Positions 730-64,000 of a DNA stretch of 64,000 nucleotides are shown here, piece after piece. The stretch is taken from positions 235,876 through 299,875 of IMG/VR virus record IMGVR_UViG_3300036766_000194; one strand, 5' to 3'. Every line of letters starts with the position of its first letter. The first letter of the stretch is position 1. The notes under the pieces are model-generated. The model was given only the letters and a program-made list of their open reading frames with translations. It made no database searches and was not told the DNA's origin. The translations under genes and the position numbers were made by a program.

Positions 730-1743
730 ATGCAGATTCCTATTCCTCCTTCTGGAGTTATACCTAACCACATTTTTGAAACCTATTGGAATTTTGCCAG
801 TGAGCGTCAACGTGTGTTTTGGAAACGCAAGAATGGTGAACCAGGTCCTTGGAGTGAAGATCCTATTCTGCAAACCTATAAATTTACCAATACTTACCGG
901 GTACTGGATAGAGTCAGCCAGTACCTATTGAGGAATATCATCGTCTATCCGGAGTGTAGCGATTTGGATTGTACAGTCCACTCTTCTCCTGAGAACACAA
1001 TCTTCCGTATTATGTTCTTTAAGCTATTCAATCGTCCAGAAACTTGGGAAATGCTCAGCAGTGAATTAGGCGAAGAACCCCATATAGATAATTTTAACTT
1101 TACCATCTACGATGAAACTCTTACATCTGCTCAAGATCGTGGAGAGAAAATTTATTCCAACGCATACATGATGACAGCTGCGGGTAGTAACGGGGATCGT
1201 CGTCACCGGATGTATTTGCGATTGTATGAAAAGATGTTTCATGAGGATAAAATCCAGGACAAGATTTTAGAAGCCACTTCACTAGAGGCTCTCTACAATC
1301 TTATCCGTACATATCGGACCATGGGACCATTCCTCGCGATGCAGTACGCAATTGACCTCAATTATTCTCCGTTCGTAAATTTCTTAGAGACAGACTTCAT
1401 CATAGCCGGACCGGGAGCTAGAAGAGGAATCCTAAAATGTTTTGATAGCATAGGAAACCACAATGAAGCTGATGTTATAAGATGGGTTCAAGAAACTCAA
1501 GATGAACAATTTATGTCGCGAGGGTTAGAATTTAAAAAGATAGGAAATCGTCCTCTACAGTTAATTGATTGCCAGTCGTTATTTTGTGAGGTGGATAAAT
1601 TTACAAGAGCAAGTAACCCTGAAATCCAGGTTGAGACAGGATCCGGGGATGCTCAAAAACGAGCAAGGATTAAACAGAACTTCAAGGAAAACAGTAATAA
1701 GATTGAGTATGTGTTTCCCTCCAAATGGGGAGTTAAGATATGA
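730..1743 (+). CDS. aGPT-Pplase1 / 5-hmdU DNA kinase helical-domain protein (thymidine hypermodification)
   Basis: Motifs YWNFASERQRVFWKR, PWSEDPILQTYKFTNTYRVLDRVSQYL, GPFLAMQYAIDLNYS, AGPGARRG and LIDCQSLFCEVDKF are typical of the family. ATG 730 is preferred because the called TTG at 640 lies inside the 83-bp repeat. Confidence 0.85.
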   Translation: MQIPIPPSGVIPNHIFETYWNFASERQRVFWKRKNGEPGPWSEDPILQTYKFTNTYRVLDRVSQYLLRNIIVYPECSDLDCTVHSSPENTIFRIMFFKLFNRPETWEMLSSELGEEPHIDNFNFTIYDETLTSAQDRGEKIYSNAYMMTAAGSNGDRRHRMYLRLYEKMFHEDKIQDKILEATSLEALYNLIRTYRTMGPFLAMQYAIDLNYSPFVNFLETDFIIAGPGARRGILKCFDSIGNHNEADVIRWVQETQDEQFMSRGLEFKKIGNRPLQLIDCQSLFCEVDKFTRASNPEIQVETGSGDAQKRARIKQNFKENSNKIEYVFPSKWGVKI

Positions 1744-4171: not shown

Positions 4172-4389
4172 GTAGTTTTACCAAGATTCATATTCCGTTA
4201 CGTCTAAACTATCGTTACACTTGTTACAGCGGACTACAGTGTTTGGTCCAATTCCACTTGCCCCGCTCTGCGCTACAGTAATATTCTCTCCCTCACAATC
4301 AAACTGGTGGGTAAGAGGGATAAATGGTCACGTTACCACTTCATGAGATCTGAACTTATAAAGATAGCAGGTTGGTTACAGGAACACCA

Positions 4390-4533
4390 TTACGAGAGAA
4401 ATAGGATCAATTCGTATGAGCATTCCAGCAAAAGTAAATTGATAGATGCTTGTTTAAGAATTTCGTTAACAGCAAGTTGTAAATCAAGAGGTAACGGCGT
4501 TAATTGCCGTAACTCATCATCCAGAGATGACAT
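4390..4533 (-). CDS. small hypothetical protein (47 aa, MSSLDDELRQ...)
   Basis: AAGGAG RBS right after the upstream gene; below the ORF-track cutoff. Confidence 0.35.
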   Translation of the reverse strand: MSSLDDELRQLTPLPLDLQLAVNEILKQASINLLLLECSYELILFLS

Positions 4534-4551
4534 TGTAACTCTCCTTAAAGA

Positions 4552-5190
4552 CTAGAACGACAAAATCCAACTAAAAATTAAATTGACTCCAGGCGGTAGT
4601 AAAAGAGGGGGTAGGGTCTTATAATTTATTAGAGTAACTGAATTAGGACTCGGTCCTCCCCCATATGAAATGTCAGCGGGGTTCCAATAAGGAGCCGTAA
4701 GCATGTTGGTGGGAGTCTGCTTAGATCCTCCTCCAATTAAGCCCATTTCTCTTATTCCCACACCTGTGATGTTATCTGTGGTTGCGTTAACAAGTGTTTG
4801 AAAATCCACAAGATTGGTAAACTTTGTAACCGGAGTAAAATTTATATTGTCTGTGGTCGTAACGAAATTTACAGTACTAAGCTGCTTACGCAATACCTGA
4901 GCGATGAGAGCCGTCTGACCAGGGGTTTCTGTAGGCTGGGTATCAGGACTCCAGGTGGGATCTCCAGTTCCTAGAGCCAGTCCCCAAACCGCATAGAGAC
5001 AATCGCTTGATAGAACATTCGGTCCCGAAATGAGAGCCGTATTGGGGAGGTTATTCGCCATGAGTCTAGCAAACAAACTCTTAACTGTGTTGACTATAAC
5101 ATTGGGACTCTGCCACAGAATTTCTCCCGTATCTTGACGAATGATACGCGGTAGCCCCTTTACAACTGTGTTTTCGACATGCTCTAGCAT
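4552..5190 (-). CDS. baseplate/tail-fibre attachment protein (tail-collar-like)
   Basis: NVIVN...LALGTG...QTAL...IREMGLIGG...LINYKT pattern seen in myovirus fibre-proximal proteins; lies after the wedge genes. Confidence 0.55.
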   Translation of the reverse strand: MLEHVENTVVKGLPRIIRQDTGEILWQSPNVIVNTVKSLFARLMANNLPNTALISGPNVLSSDCLYAVWGLALGTGDPTWSPDTQPTETPGQTALIAQVLRKQLSTVNFVTTTDNINFTPVTKFTNLVDFQTLVNATTDNITGVGIREMGLIGGGSKQTPTNMLTAPYWNPADISYGGGPSPNSVTLINYKTLPPLLLPPGVNLIFSWILSF

Positions 5191-5214
5191 AGTGCTCCTC
5201 TAAAATAATACCTT

Positions 5215-6180
5215 TTAGTCATTCCAAATAGTTATATTGGCTTTACAGTTAAGACATCGACCTATCCAGTGGGTTATGTTTTCTCCCCCTTGAGATCTTG
5301 GAAGAAAGTTCAGCCGTACTGGTGGCATGGGTCCGTTACATCCAGGGCATTTCTTTCCTCGTTCTCCAGAGTGTTGAAGATCTGAAGCGTCGGCTGAATA
5401 AGCGTTTCTTCCTTCTACATACCAAAGAGTTCCAACATCAGCAGTTTTATTTTCACCACATTTGCATCCTGGAGGACATTTGCAATTTGCGCCGCATTTG
5501 CAGTTGGGACCGCAATGACAGCTTGAACTGGCCTGAATCTTCTGTAGCAATCTACTTTTCCACTGTTGTTCCACGGGAAGTACTCCTGTCGGTTTACCCA
5601 TCTGGTCATACACAATTACATATAACGGTTTGGGTTGGGTTTTCAATTGTCTATTTCTATACATCTGGATGACCCGCTGAGCATCATTTATAGTCGGCTT
5701 GATCGGTATTGCTTTAGCAAACTCTATTTTACGGACCTGTGGAGCACGTTGTATATATGTTGCCGAGGTTATCACCCGTTCTTGTGTCTCTTGAACAAAC
5801 GTCTGGGGAAGTTTAAACAACCCCCTATAAGTTTGTAGAGTGGGATCGTGTCCTACGTCAGGTGTACTTGCCTGGGTTGAATTTTCCATAGACAAACCAG
5901 CAAAACAATTTAAAGCACGCGCATAAATGTCTGTGATAACATCTTTGTCATAGCGCAAACTAAGCATAAAAGTAGCGACTTCGTCAAGAAGAACTCCTAG
6001 AGCTTCTTGCGTAACCGTAACCATATTCTTTGGTTCGTCCACAACAAGTGGGAATTTTAAGGAGAATCTTGTGAAGTTGGGTATTCCTAAATCTAATTCT
6101 ATAACGACACAAGGGGTAGCATCACGGATAATCGTGATTTCTAATTCTCCAGCAACAGGCGAAATGTAGGAAATCTTCAT
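5215..6180 (-). CDS. hypothetical virion-module protein with metallothionein-like Cys cluster and Zn ribbon
   Basis: CHCGPNCKCGANCKCPPGCKCG and CPGC...CLNC. Confidence 0.65.
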   Translation of the reverse strand: MKISYISPVAGELEITIIRDATPCVVIELDLGIPNFTRFSLKFPLVVDEPKNMVTVTQEALGVLLDEVATFMLSLRYDKDVITDIYARALNCFAGLSMENSTQASTPDVGHDPTLQTYRGLFKLPQTFVQETQERVITSATYIQRAPQVRKIEFAKAIPIKPTINDAQRVIQMYRNRQLKTQPKPLYVIVYDQMGKPTGVLPVEQQWKSRLLQKIQASSSCHCGPNCKCGANCKCPPGCKCGENKTADVGTLWYVEGRNAYSADASDLQHSGERGKKCPGCNGPMPPVRLNFLPRSQGGENITHWIGRCLNCKANITIWND

Positions 6181-6183
6181 ATA

Positions 6184-7419
6184 CTATACCATCAAAAATC
6201 CGTTAAATATATCACCGCCGGAAATCTCCCATGCTTGATTGATACGTGGCGCAAGAACACCTGGTGGAACACCTCTATTAGTCCACACCACCGTACCATC
6301 GGTTGTTGTTCCGTCTACACTAGAAGAGAAAGCAAAGGCAGAAGTGTTAGTCCAGGTGATGTGGTTATCTACAACAGTTCCCGATAAGATACGACTGAAA
6401 GTTGGGACTCCTGTTCCCGATTTCTGGTCCCCTGTAACCGCTGTAACTGTCTGAATATTGTTATTCAAATCTCTTATCTTATCTCCAATATTGTAGACGT
6501 GAGAAGAGACCCAATAGGGGTAGGTGGTTCCTGCTGTCGTAACTTGCTGCACAAAACCATTTAAATCTAAGATTGAATCTCCTATGGCGGGACTTCCGGT
6601 AAATCCGTAAGCCTGACCACGGTTGTAGTAGGAGTTAATGGGCCAACCTGACACCATAGCTAATCCAGTATGAGGGGTGGTTGGTAGAAGGTCGGGAACC
6701 AAGAATAATTGAGGAGGAAAAGTATCTCCTTCAATTTGACGAACAAAAATGCGTAAAGTATCCTGTATGCTTAGGATGAAAGCATCAATGTCTTCACCCG
6801 AACCGAACACAGTGGCTAGATTTAGTCCCACATGGGCTGGTTTAGCTAAGTTTATAGCCCCTGATAAAGTCTGTGTTATAGCTTGAAGTTGATTTAAATC
6901 TGAAATACTATTTAAAGATCCTCCAACACTTATGCTTACGTTAAGACTGTTACGATCTGACTGATCATAAAACTGACCAATTAGCTTATACAGTTCTACT
7001 ATCTTGATATTGAGTCCTGTGTATGCTGAGATCACCCTTTCTATCCCGTCTACCTTGGACCCTTCCAAATAAGCCTGTATTAACTGAACTAACATAGTAC
7101 GATAAGCTATGTCAGACTGAGTGTCTTGAGGATAGATACGACTGATAGATAAGGGTTCTGACCAACGACGACGAATATCCGGAGGAGTAAGGTAACTTGG
7201 GTTTTTGTTTACCTGATCGTAGGCATAATTGTATTCCAATTGAGCCAATTCTATAGCCACAGCACGGAGAATCTCTCCCCATATACTTTGGTCATTTCTA
7301 GGTGTGTAGTAATTAGCAGTGGCTTGTAACAACGAGTTCATTAGAGCATCTTCATATTGAAGAAGATCTTCTCGTGTTCTTATGTAAAGATTATCTGCTT
7401 GTTGGGTAGGTACGCTCAT
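6184..7419 (-). CDS. baseplate wedge protein (P2 gpI-like) with Trp-containing carbohydrate-binding-like repeats
   Basis: SDIAYRTML..LIQAYLEGS...I...INLAKPAH; follows the gpJ-like gene. Confidence 0.65.
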   Translation of the reverse strand: MSVPTQQADNLYIRTREDLLQYEDALMNSLLQATANYYTPRNDQSIWGEILRAVAIELAQLEYNYAYDQVNKNPSYLTPPDIRRRWSEPLSISRIYPQDTQSDIAYRTMLVQLIQAYLEGSKVDGIERVISAYTGLNIKIVELYKLIGQFYDQSDRNSLNVSISVGGSLNSISDLNQLQAITQTLSGAINLAKPAHVGLNLATVFGSGEDIDAFILSIQDTLRIFVRQIEGDTFPPQLFLVPDLLPTTPHTGLAMVSGWPINSYYNRGQAYGFTGSPAIGDSILDLNGFVQQVTTAGTTYPYWVSSHVYNIGDKIRDLNNNIQTVTAVTGDQKSGTGVPTFSRILSGTVVDNHITWTNTSAFAFSSSVDGTTTDGTVVWTNRGVPPGVLAPRINQAWEISGGDIFNGFLMV

Positions 7420-55074: not shown

Positions 55075-55152
55075 ACCGTTAGGACTTTTGTAAGCGCAAA
55101 AATCCAACGACAATTAAACACTACACAATAATCAAAAGGGGAAGGTTTGTCT

Positions 55153-57069
55153 ATGAGTAGTACGCAGAAGTTGTCTCCATATCAATCCTATATTCATAAA
55201 TCACGTTATGCGAGATGGTTACCCGAGAAGAAACGTAGAGAAGAATGGGAGGAGACAATTGATCGCTACTTGAAATTTTTTGCCCCTCGTATACCAAAAG
55301 CTGAGAGAATAGATGTTTTAGCAGAACTTAAAGAAGCTATTCTAAGTCTCAAAGTCATGCCTAGTATGCGGGCTATGATGACAGCTGGTGAAGCTCTAGA
55401 GAAGGACAATGTAGCTGGATATAACTGTTCCTACATAGCTATTGATGATCCTCGCGCCTTTGATGAAGCAATGTACATTAGTATGTGTGGAACTGGGGTA
55501 GGATTCTCCGTTGAGCGTCAATATGTAAACAAGATGCCCACGATTGCAGAAGAATTCTTTACCACTAACACAGTCATCAAGATAAAAGATTCTAAGATTG
55601 GTTGGGCTTCTGGTTTTAAAGAACTCATCCAGCTTCTTTATGTAGGATTGATTCCTTCTTGGGATCTAAGTTTAGTTCGTGAAGCGGGTGCCCCTTTAAA
55701 AACTTTTGGTGGTAGGGCATCAGGACCTGCTCCTCTAGATAATCTTTTTAAATTCACTGTGTCTGTATTCAAGAAAGCAGCGGGAAGAAAACTAAATTCA
55801 CTTGAATGTCATGACTTGATGTGTAAGATAGCTGATGTTGTGGTAAGTGGGGGTGTTCGTCGTTCGGCTATGATTAGCCTTTCTAACTTATCGGATGACC
55901 GTATGCGTAACGCCAAAAACGGTCAATGGTGGATAGAAGATGGACAACGTGCTTTAGCAAATAATTCCATAGCTTATACAGAGGGTCGTCCCGAGCCTGT
56001 AATATTCTTCCGTGAATTTGGCACTCTCATTGAATCTAAATCTGGTGAACGTGGTATGTTTAGCCGTGTTGGAGCCCAAAATCAAGCTAAGAGAACAGGT
56101 CGTCGTAAATGGGAGAATGTGGAATTCGGAACAAATCCTTGCGGTGAAATTATTCTTCGTCCTATGGGATTCTGTAATTTAACCGAGGTTGTCGTTCGCA
56201 CTGAGGATACCCTAGACTCTCTTAAGAATAAGATTCGTCTAGCAACTATTTTAGGAACACTTCAGTCCACTCTGACAGAATTTCGTTATCTCCGTAAGGC
56301 TTGGCAGAAGAATGCCGAGGAAGAACGGCTTCTTGGAGTGTCTCTTACTGGTATCATGGACCACCCAACACTCTCGTCGTTGAAGGAACCAGAAGTCTTG
56401 GGCAAAGTACTTCGTCAATTGAAACAAATGGCTATTGACACAAACATAGAATGGGCGGACAAGCTGAGTATCAATCCCTCCGTTTCCATTACTTGTGTTA
56501 AGCCTTCAGGAACGGTTTCTCAGCTGGTAAACAGTTCCAGTGGCATTCACACTAGATGGAGCCGTTACATCATGAGAAGCGTCCGTAATGATAAGAAGGA
56601 CCCATTAGGAGCCATGTTAAAGACCCTTGGGATACCTTGGGAGGCCGATGTTACAAAACCCAACGATGTAGATGTTTTTTATTTCCCTCTTGAATCCCCA
56701 GAGAAGTCCGTTACACGCACGGAACGTAATGCTATTCAACAGTTGGAACTTTATCTCATTTATAAGCAGAATTGGTGTGAGCATAATCCCTCTTGCACCA
56801 TATATGTTCAGGATGATGAGTGGGTCGATGTTGCTGCCTGGGTGTATAGGAATTTTGCGGAGATTGGTGGAATCAGCTTCCTCCCTCATTCCGAGCACAT
56901 CTATCGGCAAGCTCCCTTCCAAGAACTTACGGAGGAGGAGTACAGGAAAGCTCTAGAAACATTTCCCAAGGACATTGACTGGAGTCGTTTGCCAGAGTTT
57001 GAAAAAGAAGACCACACAACTTCAACGAAAGAATTGGCCTGTTCTGCAAATGCTTGTGAGCTAATTTAG
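55153..57069 (+). CDS. nrdJ: class II (B12-dependent) ribonucleotide reductase
   Basis: SRYARW, MPSMR, YNCS, GGVRRSA, TNPCGEI, CVKPSGT, C-terminal CSANAC; no beta-subunit gene adjacent. Confidence 0.85.
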   Translation: MSSTQKLSPYQSYIHKSRYARWLPEKKRREEWEETIDRYLKFFAPRIPKAERIDVLAELKEAILSLKVMPSMRAMMTAGEALEKDNVAGYNCSYIAIDDPRAFDEAMYISMCGTGVGFSVERQYVNKMPTIAEEFFTTNTVIKIKDSKIGWASGFKELIQLLYVGLIPSWDLSLVREAGAPLKTFGGRASGPAPLDNLFKFTVSVFKKAAGRKLNSLECHDLMCKIADVVVSGGVRRSAMISLSNLSDDRMRNAKNGQWWIEDGQRALANNSIAYTEGRPEPVIFFREFGTLIESKSGERGMFSRVGAQNQAKRTGRRKWENVEFGTNPCGEIILRPMGFCNLTEVVVRTEDTLDSLKNKIRLATILGTLQSTLTEFRYLRKAWQKNAEEERLLGVSLTGIMDHPTLSSLKEPEVLGKVLRQLKQMAIDTNIEWADKLSINPSVSITCVKPSGTVSQLVNSSSGIHTRWSRYIMRSVRNDKKDPLGAMLKTLGIPWEADVTKPNDVDVFYFPLESPEKSVTRTERNAIQQLELYLIYKQNWCEHNPSCTIYVQDDEWVDVAAWVYRNFAEIGGISFLPHSEHIYRQAPFQELTEEEYRKALETFPKDIDWSRLPEFEKEDHTTSTKELACSANACELI

Positions 57070-57098: not shown

Positions 57099-57503
57099 TT
57101 GGTTGACAAAGAGAACATCATCTACGGTTACAGTCAGGGGTGTTTGAAATGTCTGGGAAAACGACACCGAGGTCAGAATAATGGCAATTGGAAGGGATAT
57201 AGAGAAATTCCCGTATCATACTTCTATTCTCTCAAAGAAGGAGCATTGGCTCGTGGCATTTCGTTTGAGGTACTAATAGAAGAGATACAGAATCTCTGGG
57301 AGAAGAGCGGCGGATATTGCGCTTTGACTGGTTGGAAGATTGAAATAGGTAAAACCGCTTCTCTAGACAGAATACAGAGTGAGGACTCCTATAAGAAAGA
57401 GAATCTTCAGTGGGTGCACAAGGATATAAACCGTATGAAAAATAACTATTCCCAGGATCGGTTTATTGAAGTCTGCCGTGCGGTTGCGGAAAGGACGAAT
57501 TAA
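57099..57503 (+). CDS. HNH-type homing endonuclease (possibly N-truncated)
   Basis: CALTG...ASLDRI.S...Y...N.QWVH..IN.MK. Confidence 0.75.
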   Translation: MVDKENIIYGYSQGCLKCLGKRHRGQNNGNWKGYREIPVSYFYSLKEGALARGISFEVLIEEIQNLWEKSGGYCALTGWKIEIGKTASLDRIQSEDSYKKENLQWVHKDINRMKNNYSQDRFIEVCRAVAERTN

Positions 57504-57506
57504 GGC

Positions 57507-57785
57507 ATGAAACAGATACTTGTTTTCAAGGGCCGTCGTAAGAGCGATGGCAAGATTATCGAGCAGCCATACCCGGTGGAGATGGAGCAACCCTCCCACG
57601 CCCCGGCCATCGCCGCCGCGTTACTCCAGAAGATGTTCGCCCTGACTGGAGTAGTGGGCATGGATTCCGATGCGACAGACCGGGTGATACTGATCCCTGC
57701 TCATTCTTGCGATCAAATTTGGTGTGATATTCCGAGCATCATCCTAGTAGATGCTCTCGAAGGACAGGAACTTATCAGACCATGA
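57507..57785 (+). CDS. hypothetical protein
   Basis: ATGA-coupled to the next gene. Confidence 0.6.
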   Translation: MKQILVFKGRRKSDGKIIEQPYPVEMEQPSHAPAIAAALLQKMFALTGVVGMDSDATDRVILIPAHSCDQIWCDIPSIILVDALEGQELIRP

Positions 57786-58396
57786 AGATTGCGTTCTGTG
57801 GAACGTCTTCCGTGGGGAAGACAACCCTTGCCAAACTCGTTGCTAAGAAATTGAACCTTCCCATTCTAACGGACAAGGATCTTCATCGTGAGGTCTTCAC
57901 CCTCATGGCCGAGCAGGGGCACCCGGTTTCCACAGAATATTTTCCTGGAATGACGCGTCAGGAGCACGTTGATTTTGAACGCCATGTTTGGCTCTGTCGT
58001 CAGGACGCCCTGCGCCGCTTAGGAAATGACTGGATCACCGACGAATCACCCATCGATTTCATCAATTGGTTCTACATCGTCTGTGGCCCGTACCCGGAGC
58101 ACATGAGTGCCGACGAGTTCCGCTTCTTCAAGAACTGTTTTCTGAAAGAACTCCCACATTATGATCTGATCGTGTATCTCCCGGTGGGTGTTCTCCCCGT
58201 TGAAAATGACAATCGCCGCTTCACCAATAGCGTGAGCCTGGAGTTCTGGGACAATGCTATCCGCGGACTGCTTTTCAAGCTCTCGGATGATTTGGGGAGT
58301 CGTCTTCTAATCGTCCCGCGTGAGACCACGGACCTTGAAGCGCGTGCTGCTTTAGTTGTTGAGACCGTTGAGCTTCTTGTAAAGCACTGCGTCTAA
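57782..58396 (+). CDS. AAA_28/NadR-type P-loop nucleotide kinase
   Basis: MKIAFCGTSSVGKTTLA, WITDESPID, YDLIVYLP...ENDNRR. Confidence 0.75.
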   Translation: MKIAFCGTSSVGKTTLAKLVAKKLNLPILTDKDLHREVFTLMAEQGHPVSTEYFPGMTRQEHVDFERHVWLCRQDALRRLGNDWITDESPIDFINWFYIVCGPYPEHMSADEFRFFKNCFLKELPHYDLIVYLPVGVLPVENDNRRFTNSVSLEFWDNAIRGLLFKLSDDLGSRLLIVPRETTDLEARAALVVETVELLVKHCV

Positions 58397-58768
58397 CGGC
58401 GTCCAGAATTGAAACCAATCAGAAACGGTATCATATCTTACGGGATTTTCTTCGTCTTCTTCTATGTGTAAACTATATCTTTCTTGCTTGTAAGTGTAGA
58501 CATGAAGACCTACAATTAGACAATCTTCTACGTGTGAATTAGGAGTGAGTTTCTCCGGAAGCCCTAAGTAAGCAACGATAGGAAAAGTAAAGATAATACA
58601 GTTGAGGTTATCTTTATCGTTGTTAAAACTAATCCTGACCTTCTTACTATCTTGGGTGAAACTATCTAGAACAGAATATTGGTAATCTCCAGTGGAAAGC
58701 TCTTTACATATAGTTTGAAGGTCTGACACCGATACAAGGTAGGCTTGGTCTACTTCCATTTTTACCAT
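58352..58768 (-). CDS. hypothetical protein
   Basis: 138-aa ORF downstream of the AADT gene. Confidence 0.5.
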   Translation of the reverse strand: MVKMEVDQAYLVSVSDLQTICKELSTGDYQYSVLDSFTQDSKKVRISFNNDKDNLNCIIFTFPIVAYLGLPEKLTPNSHVEDCLIVGLHVYTYKQERYSLHIEEDEENPVRYDTVSDWFQFWTPLDAVLYKKLNGLNN

Positions 58769-58891: not shown

Positions 58892-60070
58892 TCAGTCATT
58901 TACTCTCCCGTAAATCCTGTCATTGTATCTGTTTTTGAATACCGGATCCCACTCATCCATCATTACTGGGCAACCTGTTTCTCTAAAGTGATTCTGTTTT
59001 TCTGCTTTCACCCCAATATCTGTGGGATTAAATTCTAATAATAAATGAGCAGGAAGATTTTCTTTTCTGGCGTCCCAAAATTCAGAAAAATCATTCTCTG
59101 GCCAATCTGACTCTGCCTTCTTAATACGGTTGTATAGCATGTCTGTATAAACATTAGGATAACGACGGTTGGGGCGGTACCAACTCTTATAGGTACAGAA
59201 CGTGCTCTCTAAGGTGAAGTAGGAGACATCATGGAAGTAAGGCTTATCCTTCATACGTTCTTTTGCTTCCTTCAAAAGCTCTGCAGCTTCCTTCTCTAAC
59301 CAAGATAGCATCTCGGGAGTATACTTCCCGTCAAACCTAGTGGTGTTTGAATCGTGCCAATCCAAGTCATCCCTTCCTAAGACTTTTGCCAAACCATTAC
59401 GATGAGATTTACTGCCGCTCATATCATCTAGAAACAGCTGATCACAATCTATGTTAAAACGCATGGCTCGTAGATACTCTAGATACGAGAAGGAACTCAA
59501 TCTTCCAAAACTGTAAAAGTTCTTTCTGACCTCTTCCCAGGCTTTACGGAAATTTTGGTAAGGATCAGAAGTTCCCATGAAAGTTGAAAAATATTCTTCC
59601 TGACTATCCTTACAATGATGTTTGTACTCAGTCACAGCTTTGATGAAGTTCCTCTTATTTTTAACCCTGTCCATGTCAAATGCTAGACGTTTCCATTCAG
59701 CATTGAACCAAGTGGTGAGAGCAGAAATATCCAGGGTAGATAAATCAGGGAAGTGATTGAAGATTATCTTAGAGGTTAAAGGATTTTGTGTATGCCCGTT
59801 TAAGTAGGCAAACCAGAGTCGTTGCTCCGCATCCCAATTGTATTTCTTATAAAGAAATGGCATTAGTAGGTAGACCAGGCCAGGGTGGAGATGATATTTG
59901 CAATGAAATTCGTAGAAGCGGAGGAAGACTTCGCGGCGGTAACGAGGATGACGGAAGTCCATCCCGTATTCAAGATCCGTAACTTCGGGCACGTAGTTTA
60001 GGTCAGACCAACGTCCTATAGTTGTGTGAGAAACATCGGGATAAAAATTAAGCATGAGGCCTACTCCCAA
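58892..60070 (-). CDS. amino acid:DNA transferase (aGPT-Pplase2 / AADT)
   Basis: DFR.P.YRREVFLRFY...HPG.VY, WFAYLNG.TQN, FGRLSSFSYLEYL, GS.SHRNGL, FTLES..CTYK...RYP..Y.D. Confidence 0.85.
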   Translation of the reverse strand: MGVGLMLNFYPDVSHTTIGRWSDLNYVPEVTDLEYGMDFRHPRYRREVFLRFYEFHCKYHLHPGLVYLLMPFLYKKYNWDAEQRLWFAYLNGHTQNPLTSKIIFNHFPDLSTLDISALTTWFNAEWKRLAFDMDRVKNKRNFIKAVTEYKHHCKDSQEEYFSTFMGTSDPYQNFRKAWEEVRKNFYSFGRLSSFSYLEYLRAMRFNIDCDQLFLDDMSGSKSHRNGLAKVLGRDDLDWHDSNTTRFDGKYTPEMLSWLEKEAAELLKEAKERMKDKPYFHDVSYFTLESTFCTYKSWYRPNRRYPNVYTDMLYNRIKKAESDWPENDFSEFWDARKENLPAHLLLEFNPTDIGVKAEKQNHFRETGCPVMMDEWDPVFKNRYNDRIYGRVND

Positions 60071-60962
60071 TTATCCAGTATAAACTCTTGTCATTCAGAT
60101 ACGGACGAAACTCGTCCAGATGGTCTTTCATGTAGCACCACGTTTTCGCTTCATATCTTGGATGGAATTTCAAACCATCATAGTTAAATTCTTTCAGATC
60201 TTCATACGAGGTGTAGCCCGAATCTATCAAGTCATGTTCAATGAAATTGTAGGGAAGAGGGAGGGCATCCCCAGTCACCTTGCGAATTATGTCTAGACGT
60301 TCATTTGTCCAACGTTGGTGCTTTGCTATGTTACCCATGATGCGGAATAAGATAATGTTTTTCAGGGAAGCGGGACGGAACCTTGCAATGCCATAAAGAA
60401 TAGATGTAAGAGAATTACAACTACCCGCAGGGATTAGAAGATTTTCAATGTGGGAGGGTATGTTGCGAACTTGTTCACTTCCCACTCTATGAAAGCCCTC
60501 CACCCGCGCCGGGTCATTAACTTTGTGTTCTACTGTGATGTTGGTTTCTATATGAAGCCATCCACGTTCGTTGGCAAATTTCTTTGCCTGTGCGTTGAGA
60601 TTGCCCGCGTAGCCAGGATTAACGTGTTGTATGACGGCACCACTTGCTTTGGCCGATTCGATGCTCTCATATTTAGAGGGAGCATCGGTATTCTTCCCGC
60701 CTGTAAATTGAACACACTTCATCCCGTAGTGCTTGGCGCAAGCCGCAACCATTGCGTGTTGGGGAGACCCGCCAACGGCTCCTGATGAAACCCCAGGGAA
60801 GGGACGTTCGTTAAAAAGCCAGATCAATTGTCGGAATTTGCTGCCGTTGTTGACCCCGTCAGGACTGTATAAGTCGTCTCTTTTGAACCACATTCCGCCA
60901 ATGCTTTGAACGGGAGTAAGGTCCAGTAAGTAGTCTTCCCATTTGGCTATGATGTTGTTCAT
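60048..60962 (-). CDS. PLP-dependent enzyme (fold II) of thymidine hypermodification, probable decarboxylase
   Basis: LTPVQ....WFKRDDL......GSK.RQ, SPQ, IPAGSCNS...IL.G, HPRYEAK..., LYWI; coupled to the AADT gene. Confidence 0.8.
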   Translation of the reverse strand: MNNIIAKWEDYLLDLTPVQSIGGMWFKRDDLYSPDGVNNGSKFRQLIWLFNERPFPGVSSGAVGGSPQHAMVAACAKHYGMKCVQFTGGKNTDAPSKYESIESAKASGAVIQHVNPGYAGNLNAQAKKFANERGWLHIETNITVEHKVNDPARVEGFHRVGSEQVRNIPSHIENLLIPAGSCNSLTSILYGIARFRPASLKNIILFRIMGNIAKHQRWTNERLDIIRKVTGDALPLPYNFIEHDLIDSGYTSYEDLKEFNYDGLKFHPRYEAKTWCYMKDHLDEFRPYLNDKSLYWIIGSRPHA

Positions 60963-61122
60963 ACTCTACTATAATACTAGAAGTCCATCAATTCCACCTA
61001 TTTCCCCAACTGGGAGAAAACATTGGGAGATACAAATCGCTAATTAATACCCTACTCAATCTAGCAAAGATTTTAATCCTAACCTATTCTAGAGTATTAG
61101 TGTAGAATACCACTGAGGAAAC

Positions 61123-63531
61123 ATGCCCACTATTTACCCCTATACATTTCCAGCATATCGAAATCTTCGTTACTGGAAAATTGGAGACACCGACCACGAT
61201 CCTATTGCTCGTATCATTCAACAAAGAGGTACTTCCAACCCTGAACTTTTTTATGTTCTTCCTCCTTGGTTTGATCTTCCTTTTGGAGATAAACATCTTC
61301 ATGAACATCTGATTCGTAATTGTGGAGTCTTGCGAGTTCCCCCAGGCGAGATCAAGGATCCGTATCCTGGTTCTATTGAATTAAAACCTACTGCTGAGGA
61401 ATGGTTTACTCATCCTAGTTGGGTTTCAGATACAGCATTTATTGATTTTTTGTCTCGTGAGATAAATGGACTACGTTTCGGTAAAGTCCGAGAAGACACA
61501 TTTCCTTTGCGGAAAGAGCAAGAAGGCTGCGTAAGCCGTTCTCTTACAGCATTCGAAGAAGGTGCAAAACAAATTCTCTGGGATTTGAAGCCGCGCTTCG
61601 GAAAAACTATTACTGCTTGCGAACTGGCGCGGCGCGCAAAGTACCAGAAGGTGCTTGTTCTCACTTGGCACCCGCAAGTGAAAGATGAATGGGAAAAACC
61701 AGTCAGACGGCACGTAAACTTTGTGGACCATGAGTTGGTTGTATTGGCTGAAGAAGACCGGACCCAACCCGGTTTTGAGAAACCCACCTTTGTCTTCTTA
61801 TCCTTTCAGCTTCTTACGAACCTCAAAAACGTTGAGATTTTGGCGTGGGTCAAGTCGGTGTCCTGGGACCTTATCATTCTGGACGAAGCCGATTATGGGA
61901 TGACGACCTCCAACTCTCTTCAAGTTTTGAACAGTGTACAATACGCCCGTAGGCTGGATCTCACCGGGACCGCCTTCCGCATAACACAAGCATATGATCA
62001 CACCGAACGTTGGACCTTGATTGATGAACGCAAGGCCCACCCGGAACTGCCGAAAGTTGAAATTTATCTGCTGAATTTGGCGGCGAAGGTTGCTGAGGAC
62101 GTCGAACTTAACAAGTTCACCACAGAGGAAGGATACACGGCGCTCAAGTTCTTCAGTGATTCAAAATGGGTCCGTCATTTCCTTAACTGGCTGGCGGCCT
62201 CTAATGACAGGAACTATGGACTGAACGGCCCGTTGATTGAAGGTGGGGATCATATGCTTTGGAAACTCCCCGATGTCCGTAGCTGTGACACAGTAAAGAA
62301 GGAACTAGAAAAGCATCTTCGTTTTCGTGATTATGTGCCGATCCCTGCATATGATGATAACCGGGGGATGGGGGATGACACTCTTTTTGAAGCAAAGCAA
62401 CTCATCGCGGGGGCTGAACTTGCTGGTGAGAAAAGCATCATTCTCACCTGCGGGAAACTGCTGCGTGGAGTAACCGTTCCCGAACTTACCGACATTCTAT
62501 TTCTTGACGACGGCAGTTCGGCGGCGGAATACATCCAAACCGGGTATAGATCACAGAGTCCCTGGGACAGTAAACACAAACCCGTTTGTCGCTGGTGGGA
62601 CTTTAACCCCAACCGGGGATTGACTGTCTTCGATCGTCTTCGGGATGAATATTGTGCACCGGGTGGACAGGATGTTCAAGAGTTTCTTGATTGCTTCAAT
62701 GTATTTGACTTCTTTGGCACAGGTTATAGGAAACTTGATGGAGTTGAATTTCAACGGCAATTGGATTCTTTGTTTGCCTTGGAAGCTACACGCGGCTTCC
62801 GTGCGAGTTCCTTGGCTAATCTTGAAGAGATCTCTAATCTCACCGCCGATGACTTGGCTATTCTTAGTGGGCTGCCAGAAGGGAATTTTGTAGATCCAAC
62901 TCTGTCCTTGAACGAAGCCGAAGTTGAAAATGGGAAAAACTTCGAGTCGCGTACTCAGCAAGAGAAAGAGAAAGAACAGAAGGAAAAAGTCGAGAACTTT
63001 GAAAAACAGTTGGAGACTTTGTGTCAGCAACTTCCCGTTCTTTTGTATTTCGGGAAACGAGGCGGCAATTTCCGCTCATTGATTACGGAACTTGACTCTG
63101 TTCTTGTTAGGGATTCTATGGGGTTTAACGTGGCCTTCATACTCCGTCTTTTGAATAGCGGGGTTTTGCGTGAGGAGAGGCTAGACCGAGCGGTACGTCG
63201 CTTTAAGGAAACCCCCACCGCTTTGTTGCCTTACATCACGAAAGTTAGTGGGGAAGTTGTAACTCCTCAAGGAGTTGCTGAGGATATGTTAGCGATGTTA
63301 GACCCCGCCGTTTGGTCTGACGACACGGTGTTTGTTGACCCTGTTTGCAAATCTGGGGTGTTTCTGGTTGGTTGTTATGAGAGGATGGTAAAGGCGGGAC
63401 AGACTCATGACCAAGCAATCTCTAGGCTTCGGGCGGTTGTTCCTGAAAACAGCCTATTCTTCAAAGTTACTTGTCGAACTTTAGAACTCTTTTGTGGGAT
63501 TGAACATCCCGAAAGTATTATGATCTTATGA
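61123..63531 (+). CDS. T5orf172/GIY-YIG-like nuclease + SF2 (ResIII) helicase + N-terminal part of an adenine methyltransferase
   Basis: IY.Y...KIGDT...RI.QQ...EWF; KPRFGKT, DEAD, LTGT, RGVTVP, YIQ..YR.Q; EVVTP and DPVCKSGVFL (motif I). Confidence 0.8.
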   Translation: MPTIYPYTFPAYRNLRYWKIGDTDHDPIARIIQQRGTSNPELFYVLPPWFDLPFGDKHLHEHLIRNCGVLRVPPGEIKDPYPGSIELKPTAEEWFTHPSWVSDTAFIDFLSREINGLRFGKVREDTFPLRKEQEGCVSRSLTAFEEGAKQILWDLKPRFGKTITACELARRAKYQKVLVLTWHPQVKDEWEKPVRRHVNFVDHELVVLAEEDRTQPGFEKPTFVFLSFQLLTNLKNVEILAWVKSVSWDLIILDEADYGMTTSNSLQVLNSVQYARRLDLTGTAFRITQAYDHTERWTLIDERKAHPELPKVEIYLLNLAAKVAEDVELNKFTTEEGYTALKFFSDSKWVRHFLNWLAASNDRNYGLNGPLIEGGDHMLWKLPDVRSCDTVKKELEKHLRFRDYVPIPAYDDNRGMGDDTLFEAKQLIAGAELAGEKSIILTCGKLLRGVTVPELTDILFLDDGSSAAEYIQTGYRSQSPWDSKHKPVCRWWDFNPNRGLTVFDRLRDEYCAPGGQDVQEFLDCFNVFDFFGTGYRKLDGVEFQRQLDSLFALEATRGFRASSLANLEEISNLTADDLAILSGLPEGNFVDPTLSLNEAEVENGKNFESRTQQEKEKEQKEKVENFEKQLETLCQQLPVLLYFGKRGGNFRSLITELDSVLVRDSMGFNVAFILRLLNSGVLREERLDRAVRRFKETPTALLPYITKVSGEVVTPQGVAEDMLAMLDPAVWSDDTVFVDPVCKSGVFLVGCYERMVKAGQTHDQAISRLRAVVPENSLFFKVTCRTLELFCGIEHPESIMIL

Positions 63532-64000
63532 AGTTGAAGGACTCAATCCGAGAACAACTGGCCACGCCGCGTAAGGTGATTGCGGTTGGAAATCCTCCGG
63601 TATCAGATCGGGTACCACCATCGCCTCGTACTCTTTATCACAAGTTCATAGAGACGGCTCAAAAGTTCGCAGATGAAATTCTCTTTGTGATCCCCTCCCG
63701 TTGGTACGCCGGGGGCAAGGGATTAGACGGATTTCGCAAAGCCACGCTCACCGAAGGCCACGTATACCAATTACGTGACTTCCGGGATTCTCAGACCATC
63801 TTCCCAATTATTTCTGGCGGCGTTTGTTTCTTTCACTGGAAGAAGGACTACACGGGGCTGTGCAACTGGTCCAATGACCAAGGGAACAAAGTTCAGCGTG
63901 ATCTGGCTGAATACGATGTTTTGGTGCGGGACTTAACCGGGCGGGAAATTCTCAAGAAGGTATTGGCGAAACACCCAGGACCGTTCTTAAACTCAACGAC
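63528..64000 (+). CDS. Eco57I-like methyltransferase/specificity subunit (runs off the window; not in the ORF track); motif IV reads NPPV
   Basis: ATGA-coupled. Reads MKLKDS...VGNPPVSDRVPPSPRTLYHKFIE...IPSRWYAGGKGLDGFR...IFP.ISGGVCFF.W. Confidence 0.8.
   Translation, partial: MKLKDSIREQLATPRKVIAVGNPPVSDRVPPSPRTLYHKFIETAQKFADEILFVIPSRWYAGGKGLDGFRKATLTEGHVYQLRDFRDSQTIFPIISGGVCFFHWKKDYTGLCNWSNDQGNKVQRDLAEYDVLVRDLTGREILKKVLAKHPGPFLNST

What the first reader, a model, noticed from the sequence alone, without database searches (positions are those of the whole stretch)
61123..64000. Phage-borne nuclease-helicase-methyltransferase system divergent from the T-hypermodification genes
Seen: a T5orf172/GIY-YIG-like domain, SF2 helicase and MTase motif I in one ORF, with motif IV and the specificity region in a coupled second ORF. 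The region looks more GC-rich and lies head-to-head with the PLP/AADT operon. Inference: a captured restriction system aimed at host or competing phage DNA. The phage would be immune through modified T rather than methylation, giving a 'restriction plus hypermodification' pair.
Basis: partly seen in the sequence, partly recalled or inferred. Interest (0 to 1): 0.65.

Follow-up and report, generated by a model that had tools for sequence, protein, structure and literature searches.

The report
Split restriction-modification module in jumbo phage
A 300-kb phage that chemically disguises its thymines carries, inside that disguise gene cluster, a four-gene restriction-modification-like module whose methyltransferase is split in two, with the front half fused to a nuclease-helicase and the back half present in two interchangeable versions.

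Summary
ORF1 (window 61123-63531, 802 aa) has four parts: a divergent T5orf172/GIY-YIG-like domain, an SF2 ResIII helicase, a family-specific region, and the N-terminal half of an Eco57I-family adenine methyltransferase (motifs X and I). ORF2 starts on an ATGA overlap and carries motifs IV-VIII plus the target-recognition domain. The record is a circular assembly, so ORF2 runs on at C1:128-656. Two more genes follow: ORF3, a 72%-identical paralogue of ORF2 with canonical NPPY, and ORF4, a free-standing second N-half.

ORF2 reads NPPV because of a compensated frameshift. A near-identical environmental contig carries NPPY at the same place.

Relatives are common bacterial and phage cassettes of three genes: small N-half protein, whole methyltransferase, and T5orf172-helicase. 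Fused forms match a PADLOC Type IIG model. A complex prediction pairs ORF1's strand beta-1 with ORF3's strand beta-4 (ipSAE 0.78, best control 0.00).

AADT and PLP genes lie on one side of the module and two HMUDK-like genes on the other.

I read it as a captured, Type ISP-like ATP-dependent restriction-modification module with a split methyltransferase and swappable specificity subunits. Nuclease activity, targets and self-immunity through modified thymine are untested. Co-occurrence with AADT is confined to this phage lineage.

The parts
58892..60070 (-). AADT (aGPT-Pplase clade 2) homologue; context gene of the thymidine-hypermodification island
   Evidence: phrog_3271, E 2e-73. tblastn finds 28% identity to ViI-like phage genes annotated alpha-glutamyl/putrescinyl thymine pyrophosphorylase clade 2.
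60048..60962 (-). PLP-dependent enzyme, divergent from ORF1; context gene
   Evidence: Pfam PALP, 35.6 bits against a cut-off of 35; phrog_3650, E 8e-64.
60963..61122 (.). 160-nt divergent intergenic region between the PLP gene and ORF1
   Evidence: No sigma-70-like site above chance.
61123..61497 (+). ORF1 aa 1-125: divergent T5orf172 / GIY-YIG-like putative nuclease domain
   Evidence: 39 of 40 aligned homologues hit PF10544; ORF1 itself does not. Invariant K19, G21, T23, R30, H60 and E93 are kept. In the AF2 model (pLDDT 84), the three best VIA-align matches are GIY-YIG nucleases at Z 4.0-4.2, which is weak.
61498..62622 (+). ORF1 aa 126-500: SF2 helicase-like ATPase (ResIII)
   Evidence: Pfam ResIII, E 8e-9. 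PADLOC PDLC03626, E 8.8e-15. Motifs I, II, III and VI are intact.
62623..63240 (+). ORF1 aa 501-706: family-specific C-terminal region of the T5orf172-helicase proteins, including a charged coiled stretch
   Evidence: Aligns with the C-terminal third of the ~700-850 aa homologues.
63241..63531 (+). ORF1 aa 707-802 plus stop: methyltransferase N-half 'A' (motif X EVVTP, motif I VDPVCKSGVFL, up to about motif III)
   Evidence: Only this lineage has motif I without motif IV on the helicase protein. The same 802-aa ORF occurs in an independent contig, L019.
63528..64000 (+). ORF2 ('C-prime'), first 157 of 333 aa: methyltransferase motifs IV-VIII. It continues at record position C1:128-656 with the target-recognition domain.
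   Evidence: Pfam Eco57I at 35.1 bits. PADLOC MTase_II PDLC03375, E 4.7e-16. The join across the record ends was worked out.
63599..63621 (+). Compensated frameshift in ORF2 motif IV: +1 nt, then -1 nt 21 nt later. It rewrites seven residues so that NPPY reads NPPV.
   Evidence: DNA alignment with L019 and ORF3. The alternative frame of ORF2 reads YQIGYHH. The same NPPV form occurs in ENA protein P0072. 116 of 117 family members with a scorable motif IV have NPPY.
63874..64000 (+). The record's 127-nt 'terminal repeat'. It is the first 127 nt of a 226-nt block that is identical in ORF2 and ORF3.
   Evidence: The 127-mer occurs at C1:1, 1016 and 299749. The block spans ORF2 nt 347-572 and ORF3 nt 353-578.

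Best explanation
This is a four-gene operon encoding a Type ISP-like, ATP-dependent restriction-modification module. It was captured from the widespread 'T5orf172-helicase + Eco57I-family methyltransferase' cassettes of bacteria and phages, then rearranged.

Components:
- ORF1 supplies the putative nuclease (T5orf172/GIY-YIG-like), the SF2 translocase, and the cofactor-binding half of the methyltransferase (strands beta-1 to beta-3).
- ORF2 and ORF3 each supply the catalytic half (beta-4 onward, motif IV-VIII) plus a target-recognition domain.
- ORF4 is a small free N-half-like protein. It is conserved in the family and its role is unknown.

Proposed mechanism (inferred): ORF1 assembles in trans with either ORF2 or ORF3 to complete the Rossmann fold. 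The helicase-nuclease is thereby programmed with one of two DNA specificities. On unmodified target sites the complex hydrolyses ATP, translocates and cuts. On its own DNA it is held off by adenine methylation, by the phage's modified thymines, or by both.

Shown here: domain content, homology, the split, the paralogues, purifying selection, the polymorphic motif IV, and the genomic setting.

Inferred only: assembly (a model, not a measurement), nuclease activity, translocation, the targets (host DNA or co-infecting phages), and the source of self-immunity.
For: Domains and homology:
- Domain content.
- One PADLOC Type IIG model (PDLC03626, 1359 positions) matches family proteins across most of its length: a T5orf172-helicase relative at positions 152-801, a whole family methyltransferase at 863-1359, and the window's ORF1 and ORF2/3 over shorter stretches within those ranges (148-311 and about 1000-1112).
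- A fused single-chain homologue, P0057, is colinear helicase-motif I-NPPY.
- Relatives sit beside a whole methyltransferase in bacteria and phages.

The split is real:
- An independent contig, L019, has the same 802-aa ORF1 and the same ATGA overlap.
- An ENA contig has the same layout: C-prime, C, small N-half, HMUDK.

Assembly of the halves:
- Complex prediction of ORF1 aa 690-802 with ORF3 gave ipSAE 0.79/0.78/0.78, best control 0.00. That mark was reached by 51 of 78 solved complexes and 2 of 108 mismatched pairs. Runs agree in at least 68% of contacts; partner pLDDT is at least 86.
- The tightest contacts are ORF1 735-739 (beta-1) with ORF3 17-20 (beta-4, just before NPPY). That is the expected 3-2-1-4 strand order.
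- The ORF3 AF2 model (pLDDT 86.5) matches CamA, M.TaqI, M.BseCI and BrxX at E 5e-11 to 1e-8.

Selection and variation:
- ORF2 against ORF3 gives dN/dS 0.15-0.25 with saturated dS outside the conversion blocks.
- The recognition domain is variable between constant ends, with mosaic exchange between the two slots.

Precedents from the literature:
- T5orf172 as an active phage nuclease: ICP1 Gp88 (PMC8263062).
- A methyltransferase-helicase-T5orf172 cluster, DnmA-YeeB-YeeC; that paper reports that deleting the Vibrio crassostreae homologues raised phage sensitivity (PMC9973331).
Against: - No member of this exact family has been characterised biochemically, as far as I could find.
- B. subtilis DnmA-YeeB-YeeC showed no restriction (PMC9973331).
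- ORF1's N-domain fails the Pfam T5orf172 model directly, and its fold match to GIY-YIG nucleases is weak (Z about 4).
- ORF1's methyltransferase half is shortened by about 80 aa relative to whole relatives, and it has no clear motif II.
- The complex score may reflect the model's memory of intact methyltransferase folds.
- ORF2's join across the record ends is inferred through a repeat.
- No expression or read data could be obtained.
Confidence: 0.55

Rival explanations
1. It is a helicase-coupled modification machine only, used for anti-restriction. The complex methylates phage DNA processively to protect it from host restriction. The T5orf172-like domain serves DNA binding or recombination, not restriction.
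For: ORF3 keeps NPPY, and the fold is predicted to be reconstituted. Phage helicase-methyltransferase anti-restriction proteins exist (P1 DarB; my own knowledge). T5orf172 has been proposed to act in recombination in jumbo phages (PMC7824862). Direct Pfam and fold support for a nuclease is weak.
Against: The family-invariant GIY-YIG-type Arg and Glu are kept. Homologous cassettes in bacteria have the layout of restriction-modification systems and match a Type IIG REase-MTase model. A natural allele with a destroyed aromatic residue in motif IV persists under purifying selection, which is odd for a pure methylase. Thymine hypermodification already protects the DNA.
Confidence: 0.15
2. It is a decaying relic of a mobile restriction-modification cassette that landed in the hypermodification island. 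The split, the shortened N-half and NPPV are steps of degradation, and the module has no present function.
For: The methyltransferase is broken into pieces. The N-half lacks about 80 aa and a clear motif II. Motif IV of ORF2 is frameshifted. GC content is atypical. B. subtilis DnmA-YeeBC is regarded as a relic (PMC9973331).
Against: All four frames are open, with coupled stop/start junctions. dN/dS is 0.15-0.25. All 59 invariant columns of the helicase family are kept. The frameshift is compensated within 21 nt, so the protein is preserved. The same architecture occurs in three assemblies. The two halves are predicted to fit.
Confidence: 0.12
3. It is part of the thymidine-hypermodification pathway. 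For example, an NPPY enzyme could N-methylate the appended amine, or the translocase could deliver modification enzymes along the DNA.
For: The operon lies between AADT/PLP and two HMUDK-like genes. That position is kept in a related phage contig. NPPY enzymes methylate amino groups on substrates other than adenine (HemK/PrmC; my own knowledge).
Against: Homologous cassettes occur in bacteria and phages without AADT or HMUDK. The ORF3 fold and recognition domain match sequence-specific adenine methyltransferases. The recognition domains vary in the way restriction-modification specificity modules do. Published pathways need no such enzyme (PMC8989533).
Confidence: 0.06

Closest known systems
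Type ISP restriction-modification enzymes (LlaGI, LlaBIII)
   Same: Same order of functions along the gene(s): nuclease, SF2 helicase-like ATPase, gamma-class N6-adenine methyltransferase, target-recognition domain. The likely logic is also shared: site recognition by the methyltransferase-recognition module, then ATP-driven translocation (PMC3553950 and PMC4666363, listed).
   Different: Type ISP enzymes are single polypeptides with an Mrr/PD-(D/E)xK nuclease. Here the nuclease-like domain is T5orf172/GIY-YIG-like. The methyltransferase is split between motifs III and IV. The catalytic-half/recognition subunit is duplicated, and an extra N-half protein is present. The PDB search with ORF1 returned no Type ISP chain at E up to 1; its only hits were a Type I methyltransferase subunit (3ufb, E 0.044) and a chance match.
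Uncharacterised 'small N-half protein + Eco57I-family methyltransferase + T5orf172-ResIII helicase' cassettes of bacteria and gut phages; fused forms are modelled in PADLOC as REase_MTase_IIG PDLC03626
   Same: Direct homologues of every part: 25-32% identity for ORF1, 35-45% for ORF3, and the small N-half protein. This is the family the module belongs to.
   Different: In relatives the methyltransferase is one 440-510 aa protein and the helicase protein ends before it. Only this phage lineage fuses the N-half to the helicase, splits off the C-half and duplicates it. Gene order is helicase first, as in the closest subgroup.
DnmA-YeeB-YeeC cluster (B. subtilis; Vibrio crassostreae homologues)
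   Same: The same three activities are clustered: an adenine methyltransferase without its own nuclease, an SF2 helicase, and a T5orf172 protein (PMC9973331).
   Different: DnmA is MmeI-like and whole. The helicase and T5orf172 are separate proteins, with T5orf172 at a C-terminus. Homology to the present proteins was not tested.
M.TaqI / CamA / BREX PglX (BrxX) gamma-class adenine methyltransferases
   Same: The ORF3 model superposes on their catalytic half plus recognition domain. A family profile weakly hits PglX at motif I (E 5e-5).
   Different: Those enzymes are single chains that include strands beta-1 to beta-3. ORF3 starts 16 residues before beta-4.
MANTIS (Gao_RL) and Type III systems
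   Same: Methylation-based self-marking coupled to a helicase-nuclease effector (bioRxiv 10.64898/2026.09.23.753747).
   Different: The operon has no gene for a AAA+ loader (MtsA) or MtsB, and the PADLOC scan of ORF1-3 returned no such family. Type III Mod is beta-class and Type III Res has a C-terminal PD-(D/E)xK nuclease.

Membership tests
T5orf172 / GIY-YIG superfamily (ORF1 aa 1-125) | Match to Pfam PF10544 (or PF13455) above threshold | tested here: not met
   No hit for ORF1 aa 1-130 at E up to 1, nor in a six-frame search of the genome. ORF1 is the only one of 40 aligned members without a hit.
T5orf172 / GIY-YIG superfamily (ORF1 aa 1-125) | Homology to bona fide members, with the conserved Arg and Glu retained | tested here: met
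   Full-length homologues at E down to 5e-54 carry PF10544/PF13455. 39 of 40 aligned N-domains hit PF10544. K19, G21, T23, R30, H60 and E93 are invariant and present in ORF1.
T5orf172 / GIY-YIG superfamily (ORF1 aa 1-125) | GIY-YIG alpha/beta fold | tested here: inconclusive
   AF2 model, pLDDT 84. Foldseek against the PDB found nothing significant. The VIA-align top three are GIY-YIG nucleases: 7wme Z 4.2 (rmsd 3.7, 89 aligned), 6seh Z 4.1, 7cq2 Z 4.0. All are below the tool's trust level.
SF2 helicase-like ATPase (ResIII) | Pfam ResIII above threshold and intact motifs I, II, III and VI | tested here: met
   36 bits against a cut-off of 22.5. GKT, DE, TGT and Q..R are all in family-invariant columns.
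Eco57I-family gamma-class N6-adenine DNA methyltransferase | Catalytic motif IV (N/D)PP(Y/F/W) and PF07669 above threshold | tested here: met
   ORF3: NPPY, 43.6 bits against 25.3. ORF2: 35.1 bits, but NPPV. The ORF3 fold matches CamA, M.TaqI and BrxX.
Eco57I-family gamma-class N6-adenine DNA methyltransferase | Cofactor-binding motifs X, I and II on the same polypeptide as motif IV | tested here: not met
   Motifs X and I lie at the C-terminus of ORF1 and in ORF4. ORF2 and ORF3 begin 16-20 residues before motif IV. Motif II is not recognisable in ORF1.
Type ISP restriction-modification enzymes | Single polypeptide carrying nuclease, helicase, methyltransferase and recognition domain | tested here: not met
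   The functions are spread over at least two polypeptides.
Type ISP restriction-modification enzymes | Mrr-type PD-(D/E)xK nuclease and sequence homology to LlaGI/LlaBIII | tested here: not met
   The N-domain is T5orf172-like. phmmer against all PDB chains returned no Type ISP chain at E up to 1.
Type ISP restriction-modification enzymes | ATP-dependent translocation and collision-dependent cleavage | not testable with these tools
   Needs biochemistry.
PADLOC/DefenseFinder RM Type IIG (model PDLC03626) | Match to the fused REase-MTase profile | tested here: met
   ORF1 E 8.8e-15 (profile 148-311); ORF2 E 5.9e-8 (1000-1112); ORF3 E 1.5e-18. Coverage of the profile is partial.
MANTIS / Gao_RL | AAA+ MtsA and MtsB encoded with the methyltransferase and helicase-nuclease | tested here: not met
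   The four-gene operon has no such genes. PADLOC scans of ORF1-3 returned no such family.
DnmA-YeeB-YeeC | MmeI-like whole methyltransferase with separate helicase and T5orf172 proteins | not tested
   Compared only through the description in PMC9973331.

The most novel reading that the evidence does not exclude
This is a combinatorial split enzyme. One nuclease-translocase carries only the cofactor-binding half of a methyltransferase, and interchangeable catalytic-half/recognition subunits programme it. In the NPPV allele the slot-1 subunit still recognises DNA but cannot methylate, giving restriction without cognate methylation. That is tolerable only because the phage's own DNA is shielded by hypermodified thymine. 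The free N-half (ORF4) together with ORF3 would form a helicase-free maintenance methylase.
Probability: 0.15. Interest if true: 0.8.

Novelty: new variant of a known kind. Interest (0 to 1): 0.55.

Why it matters
If the module is active, three points follow.
- A DNA adenine methyltransferase would work as two polypeptides split between strands beta-3 and beta-4. That would give a natural way to swap the specificity of a motor-driven restriction enzyme by exchanging one small subunit.
- It would be a concrete case of a virulent-type jumbo phage pairing an offensive or exclusion nuclease with base hypermodification, the T4 logic (its own DNA chemically marked, other DNA degraded), but built from restriction-modification parts.
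- The large, uncharacterised T5orf172-helicase/Eco57I-methyltransferase family, with its conserved orphan 'N-half' protein, would gain an experimental entry point.

If the module is inactive, it documents how restriction-modification cassettes decay inside phage genomes.

Tried and rejected
- Near-identical DNA in the isolate-phage collection: none found.
- IMG/VR scans with ORF1 and the PLP protein found no relatives. The scan with ORF3 gave only distant loci.
- Many 'C-half only' methyltransferases in the protein search are not evidence for split genes. L024 is a scaffold gap, and L017 and L018 sit at contig starts. In L010 the gene caller merely cut the start of a whole methyltransferase.
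- Rejected: ORF2's NPPV as a sequencing error. It needs two compensating indels, and it recurs in an independent ENA assembly.
- Rejected: slipped-strand phase variation. The indels are not in long homopolymers.
- Promoter and terminator scans were at chance level.
- Foldseek of the N-domain against the PDB found nothing significant.
- Sequence searches of ORF1 and ORF3 against the PDB were uninformative.
There is therefore no read-level check of the repeat, the circular join or expression.
- The large representative-protein search was not used. The word search and family scans already placed the proteins.
- I could not hand a whole-length ORF2 to the reference-only tools, because it spans the record ends. 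It was analysed as two referenced pieces (P0002, P0006) and in scripts.
Full report
WHERE THE WINDOW LIES. The window is the last 64 kb of a 299,875-bp IMG/VR virus record, G000:C1:235876-299875, which is flagged as having direct terminal repeats. The last 127 nt equal the first 127 nt, so the finding runs off the window and continues at the start of the record (L004 = C1:1-12000). Genome GC is 43.4%.

THE OBSERVATION. ORF1 (61123-63531, 802 aa) has four parts.
- (i) aa 1-125. The Pfam T5orf172 model does not recognise this stretch directly. It nevertheless aligns with the N-domains of 39 homologues that all hit PF10544, and it keeps the family-invariant K19, G21, T23, R30, H60 and E93. Its AF2 model (pLDDT 84) ranks three GIY-YIG nucleases first, but only at Z 4.0-4.2.
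- (ii) An SF2 ResIII helicase with all motifs intact.
- (iii) A region specific to this helicase family.
- (iv) aa 707-802, the N-terminal part of an Eco57I-family methyltransferase. It has EVVTP and VDPVCKSGVFL and is 43-45% identical to the first ~50 residues of whole relatives.

ORF2 starts on an ATGA overlap with the ORF1 stop codon. It carries motifs IV-VIII and a recognition domain. The cassette is modestly GC-rich: 48.7%, about +2 SD. It is divergent from a PLP enzyme gene and an AADT homologue.

ORF2 is 333 aa once it is joined across the record ends. Seven nucleotides later comes ORF3 (C1:664-1668, 334 aa), a paralogue 72% identical to ORF2. On a GTGA overlap follows ORF4 (C1:1665-2129, 154 aa). 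ORF4 has only motifs X, I, II and III (GEVFT, ETSCGEGAFL) and no catalytic half. The module therefore has four genes: H-A, C-prime, C and B.

THE MOTIF IV POLYMORPHISM. ORF3 has NPPY and ORF2 has NPPV. The DNA alignment shows that ORF2 differs from an otherwise near-identical environmental allele (contig L019) by +1 nt at the Tyr codon and -1 nt 21 nt later. This compensated frameshift rewrites seven residues. The NPPV form recurs in an independent ENA assembly (P0072). L019 carries NPPY on the same backbone. Among 117 homologues with a scorable motif, 116 have NPPY.

IS THE SPLIT REAL? An independent JGI contig (L019) has the PLP gene, an 802-aa ORF1 that differs by two nucleotides, and the same overlapping start of the next gene. 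An ENA contig of 34 kb shows C-prime, C, a 157-aa B protein and then the same downstream genes. ORF2 against ORF3 gives dN/dS 0.15-0.25 with saturated dS at the N-terminus and in the recognition domain, so both copies have been under purifying selection. Blocks of 100 and 226 nt are 100% identical, which points to gene conversion.

Across six alleles from three assemblies the methyltransferase part and the last ~35 residues are constant (67-89% identity), whereas the recognition domain is variable (30-49%). Segments have been exchanged between the two slots. The slot-2 recognition domain is conserved between phages, while that of slot 1 has diverged.

A CAVEAT ON THE ASSEMBLY. The 127-nt 'terminal repeat' occurs three times in the record, at positions 1, 1016 and 299749. 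It begins exactly at the first base of the 226-nt block shared by ORF2 and ORF3. The record thus starts and ends at a repeat node of the assembly graph. Circular closure and the ORF2 join are inferred.

DO THE HALVES FIT? Complex prediction of ORF1 aa 690-802 with ORF3 gave ipSAE 0.79/0.78/0.78 against a best control of 0.00. That mark was reached by 51 of 78 solved complexes and 2 of 108 mismatched pairs. The runs agree in at least 68% of contacts, and the partner's pLDDT is at least 86. The closest contacts are ORF1 735-739 (the strand leading into motif I) with ORF3 17-20 (the strand leading into NPPY). This is the beta-1/beta-4 pairing of a class I methyltransferase. It supports complementation but does not show it, and the model may be drawing on intact methyltransferase folds. 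The ORF3 model (pLDDT 86.5) matches CamA, M.TaqI, M.BseCI and BREX BrxX/PglX. A family profile weakly hits PglX at motif I.

RELATIVES. ORF1 homologues (25-32% identity) are ~700-850-aa T5orf172-ResIII proteins from bacteria and phages. In bacteria and gut phages they form a three-gene cassette: a 220-260-aa protein that is a methyltransferase N-half only, a whole 506-509-aa Eco57I-family methyltransferase, and the helicase protein. In the subgroup closest to ORF1 the helicase comes first, then a whole methyltransferase, and in L010 then a 147-aa N-half protein.

One PADLOC Type IIG model of 1359 positions covers the helicase protein (152-801) and the methyltransferase (863-1359). A fused natural homologue, P0057, is colinear. 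Only the present lineage places motif I on the helicase protein without motif IV. The arrangement is best derived from helicase - methyltransferase - N-half by three changes: fusion of the helicase to the N-half, a break between motifs III and IV, and duplication of the C-half.

Tenacibaculum phage PTm1 has a 344-aa C-half gene with an unannotated N-half-like reading frame just upstream. It sits next to a Type II endonuclease gene and about 4.5 kb from a pyrimidine hydroxymethylase gene.

GENOMIC SETTING. The AADT homologue and the PLP enzyme lie upstream, in divergent orientation. Downstream are two HMUDK_hel genes, at C1:2126-3046 (-) and 5720-6646 (+). A third, much stronger HMUDK match lies at window 769-1629. 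A thymidylate-synthase-family gene lies at C1:111471-111980. Published work establishes 5-HMUDK, AADT and PLP enzymes as the thymidine-hypermodification pathway (PMC8989533). The restriction-modification-like operon thus sits inside hypermodification genes, and this position is kept in the related ENA contig. No other DNA methyltransferase family tested was found in the genome.

CO-OCCURRENCE. In the isolate-phage collection, 376 records hold an AADT homologue and three hold a full-length ORF1 homologue. By organism name the two lists do not overlap. NatCom_35866 and PTm1 have no AADT. The pairing is lineage-specific.

INTERPRETATION. The best-supported reading is a captured, rearranged, Type ISP-like restriction-modification module with a split methyltransferase and two alternative catalytic-half/recognition subunits (confidence 0.55). 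Literature gives precedent for T5orf172 as an active phage nuclease (PMC8263062). It also describes a methyltransferase-helicase-T5orf172 cluster, and reports that deleting its Vibrio homologues raised phage sensitivity while the B. subtilis version showed no restriction (PMC9973331).

This is plausible for the NPPV allele but is not supported as stated, because a canonical catalytic copy is retained. Rival readings are a modification-only machine, a decaying relic, or a part of the hypermodification pathway. They are less likely for the reasons given under each rival.

NOVELTY. The components and the family are known in outline and are annotated as Type IIG-like restriction-modification. I found three features undescribed in the searched literature: the split of a gamma-class adenine methyltransferase with its N-half fused to a nuclease-helicase, the duplicated and recombining specificity subunit with a polymorphic catalytic loop, and the position inside a thymidine-hypermodification island of a jumbo phage. 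I rate it a new variant of a known kind, interest 0.55.

Noticed in passing
window 63874-64000; G000:C1:1-127 and C1:1016-1142: The record's 127-nt 'direct terminal repeat' is present three times and starts exactly at the first base of a 226-nt block identical in ORF2 and ORF3. The record therefore begins and ends at an assembly repeat node. Its DTR-based 'complete, circular' status rests on that repeat.
   Followed up: partly
window 63599-63621 against L019:3544-3566: A compensated +1/-1 frameshift rewrites the seven residues after NPP in ORF2 (NPPY becomes NPPV). Both alleles exist in nature on the same backbone: L019 has NPPY; the record and ENA protein P0072 have NPPV.
   Followed up: yes
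L004:1665-2129 (ORF4); L008:3649-4338; L005:4698-5480; L010:10559-11002: A small protein consisting only of the cofactor-binding N-half of a methyltransferase (motifs X, I-III, no NPPY) is conserved next to T5orf172-helicase/methyltransferase cassettes. It is present even where the main methyltransferase is whole. Its role is unknown.
   Followed up: partly
L006 (Tenacibaculum phage PTm1, AP019524.1) 4381-6023: PTm1's annotated 344-aa 'restriction-modification methylase' is a C-half only. An unannotated N-half-like reading frame (TVTPEIV ... LLDISAKQGEFV) lies just upstream in another frame. The gene sits beside a Type II endonuclease gene and about 4.5 kb from a pyrimidine hydroxymethylase gene.
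   Followed up: partly
window 769-1629; L004:2126-3046 (-); L004:5720-6646 (+): The genome has three HMUDK_hel (5-hmdU DNA kinase) paralogues. One matches strongly (E 3e-99), 60 kb upstream of the cassette. Two are divergent (E 2e-35 and 1e-24) and flank a 590-aa and a 132-aa gene of unknown function just downstream of the cassette.
   Followed up: partly
L017:1-1075, L018:1-1013, L019:3473-3886, ENA contig of P0072: In several unrelated assemblies the contig starts or ends inside or right at this methyltransferase gene. This suggests repeats or strain-level variation at these loci in general.
   Followed up: no
P0065 aa ~178-190; L005:5473-6993 aa ~182-192; L006:4989: Whole family methyltransferases have a conserved internal Met (MKFD) seven residues before NPPY. 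This is about where the C-half-only genes start, including PTm1's and several others listed. This phage's own ORF2/ORF3 start 13 residues further upstream, 20 residues before the G of GNPPY. Whether the Met serves as an internal start is open.
   Followed up: no
window 55147-57069 and 57500-58500: There is a ribonucleotide-reductase-like gene (weak class II hits). It is followed by a second locally GC-rich stretch (49-52%) holding an AAA_28/kinase-like gene at 57782-58396.
   Followed up: no
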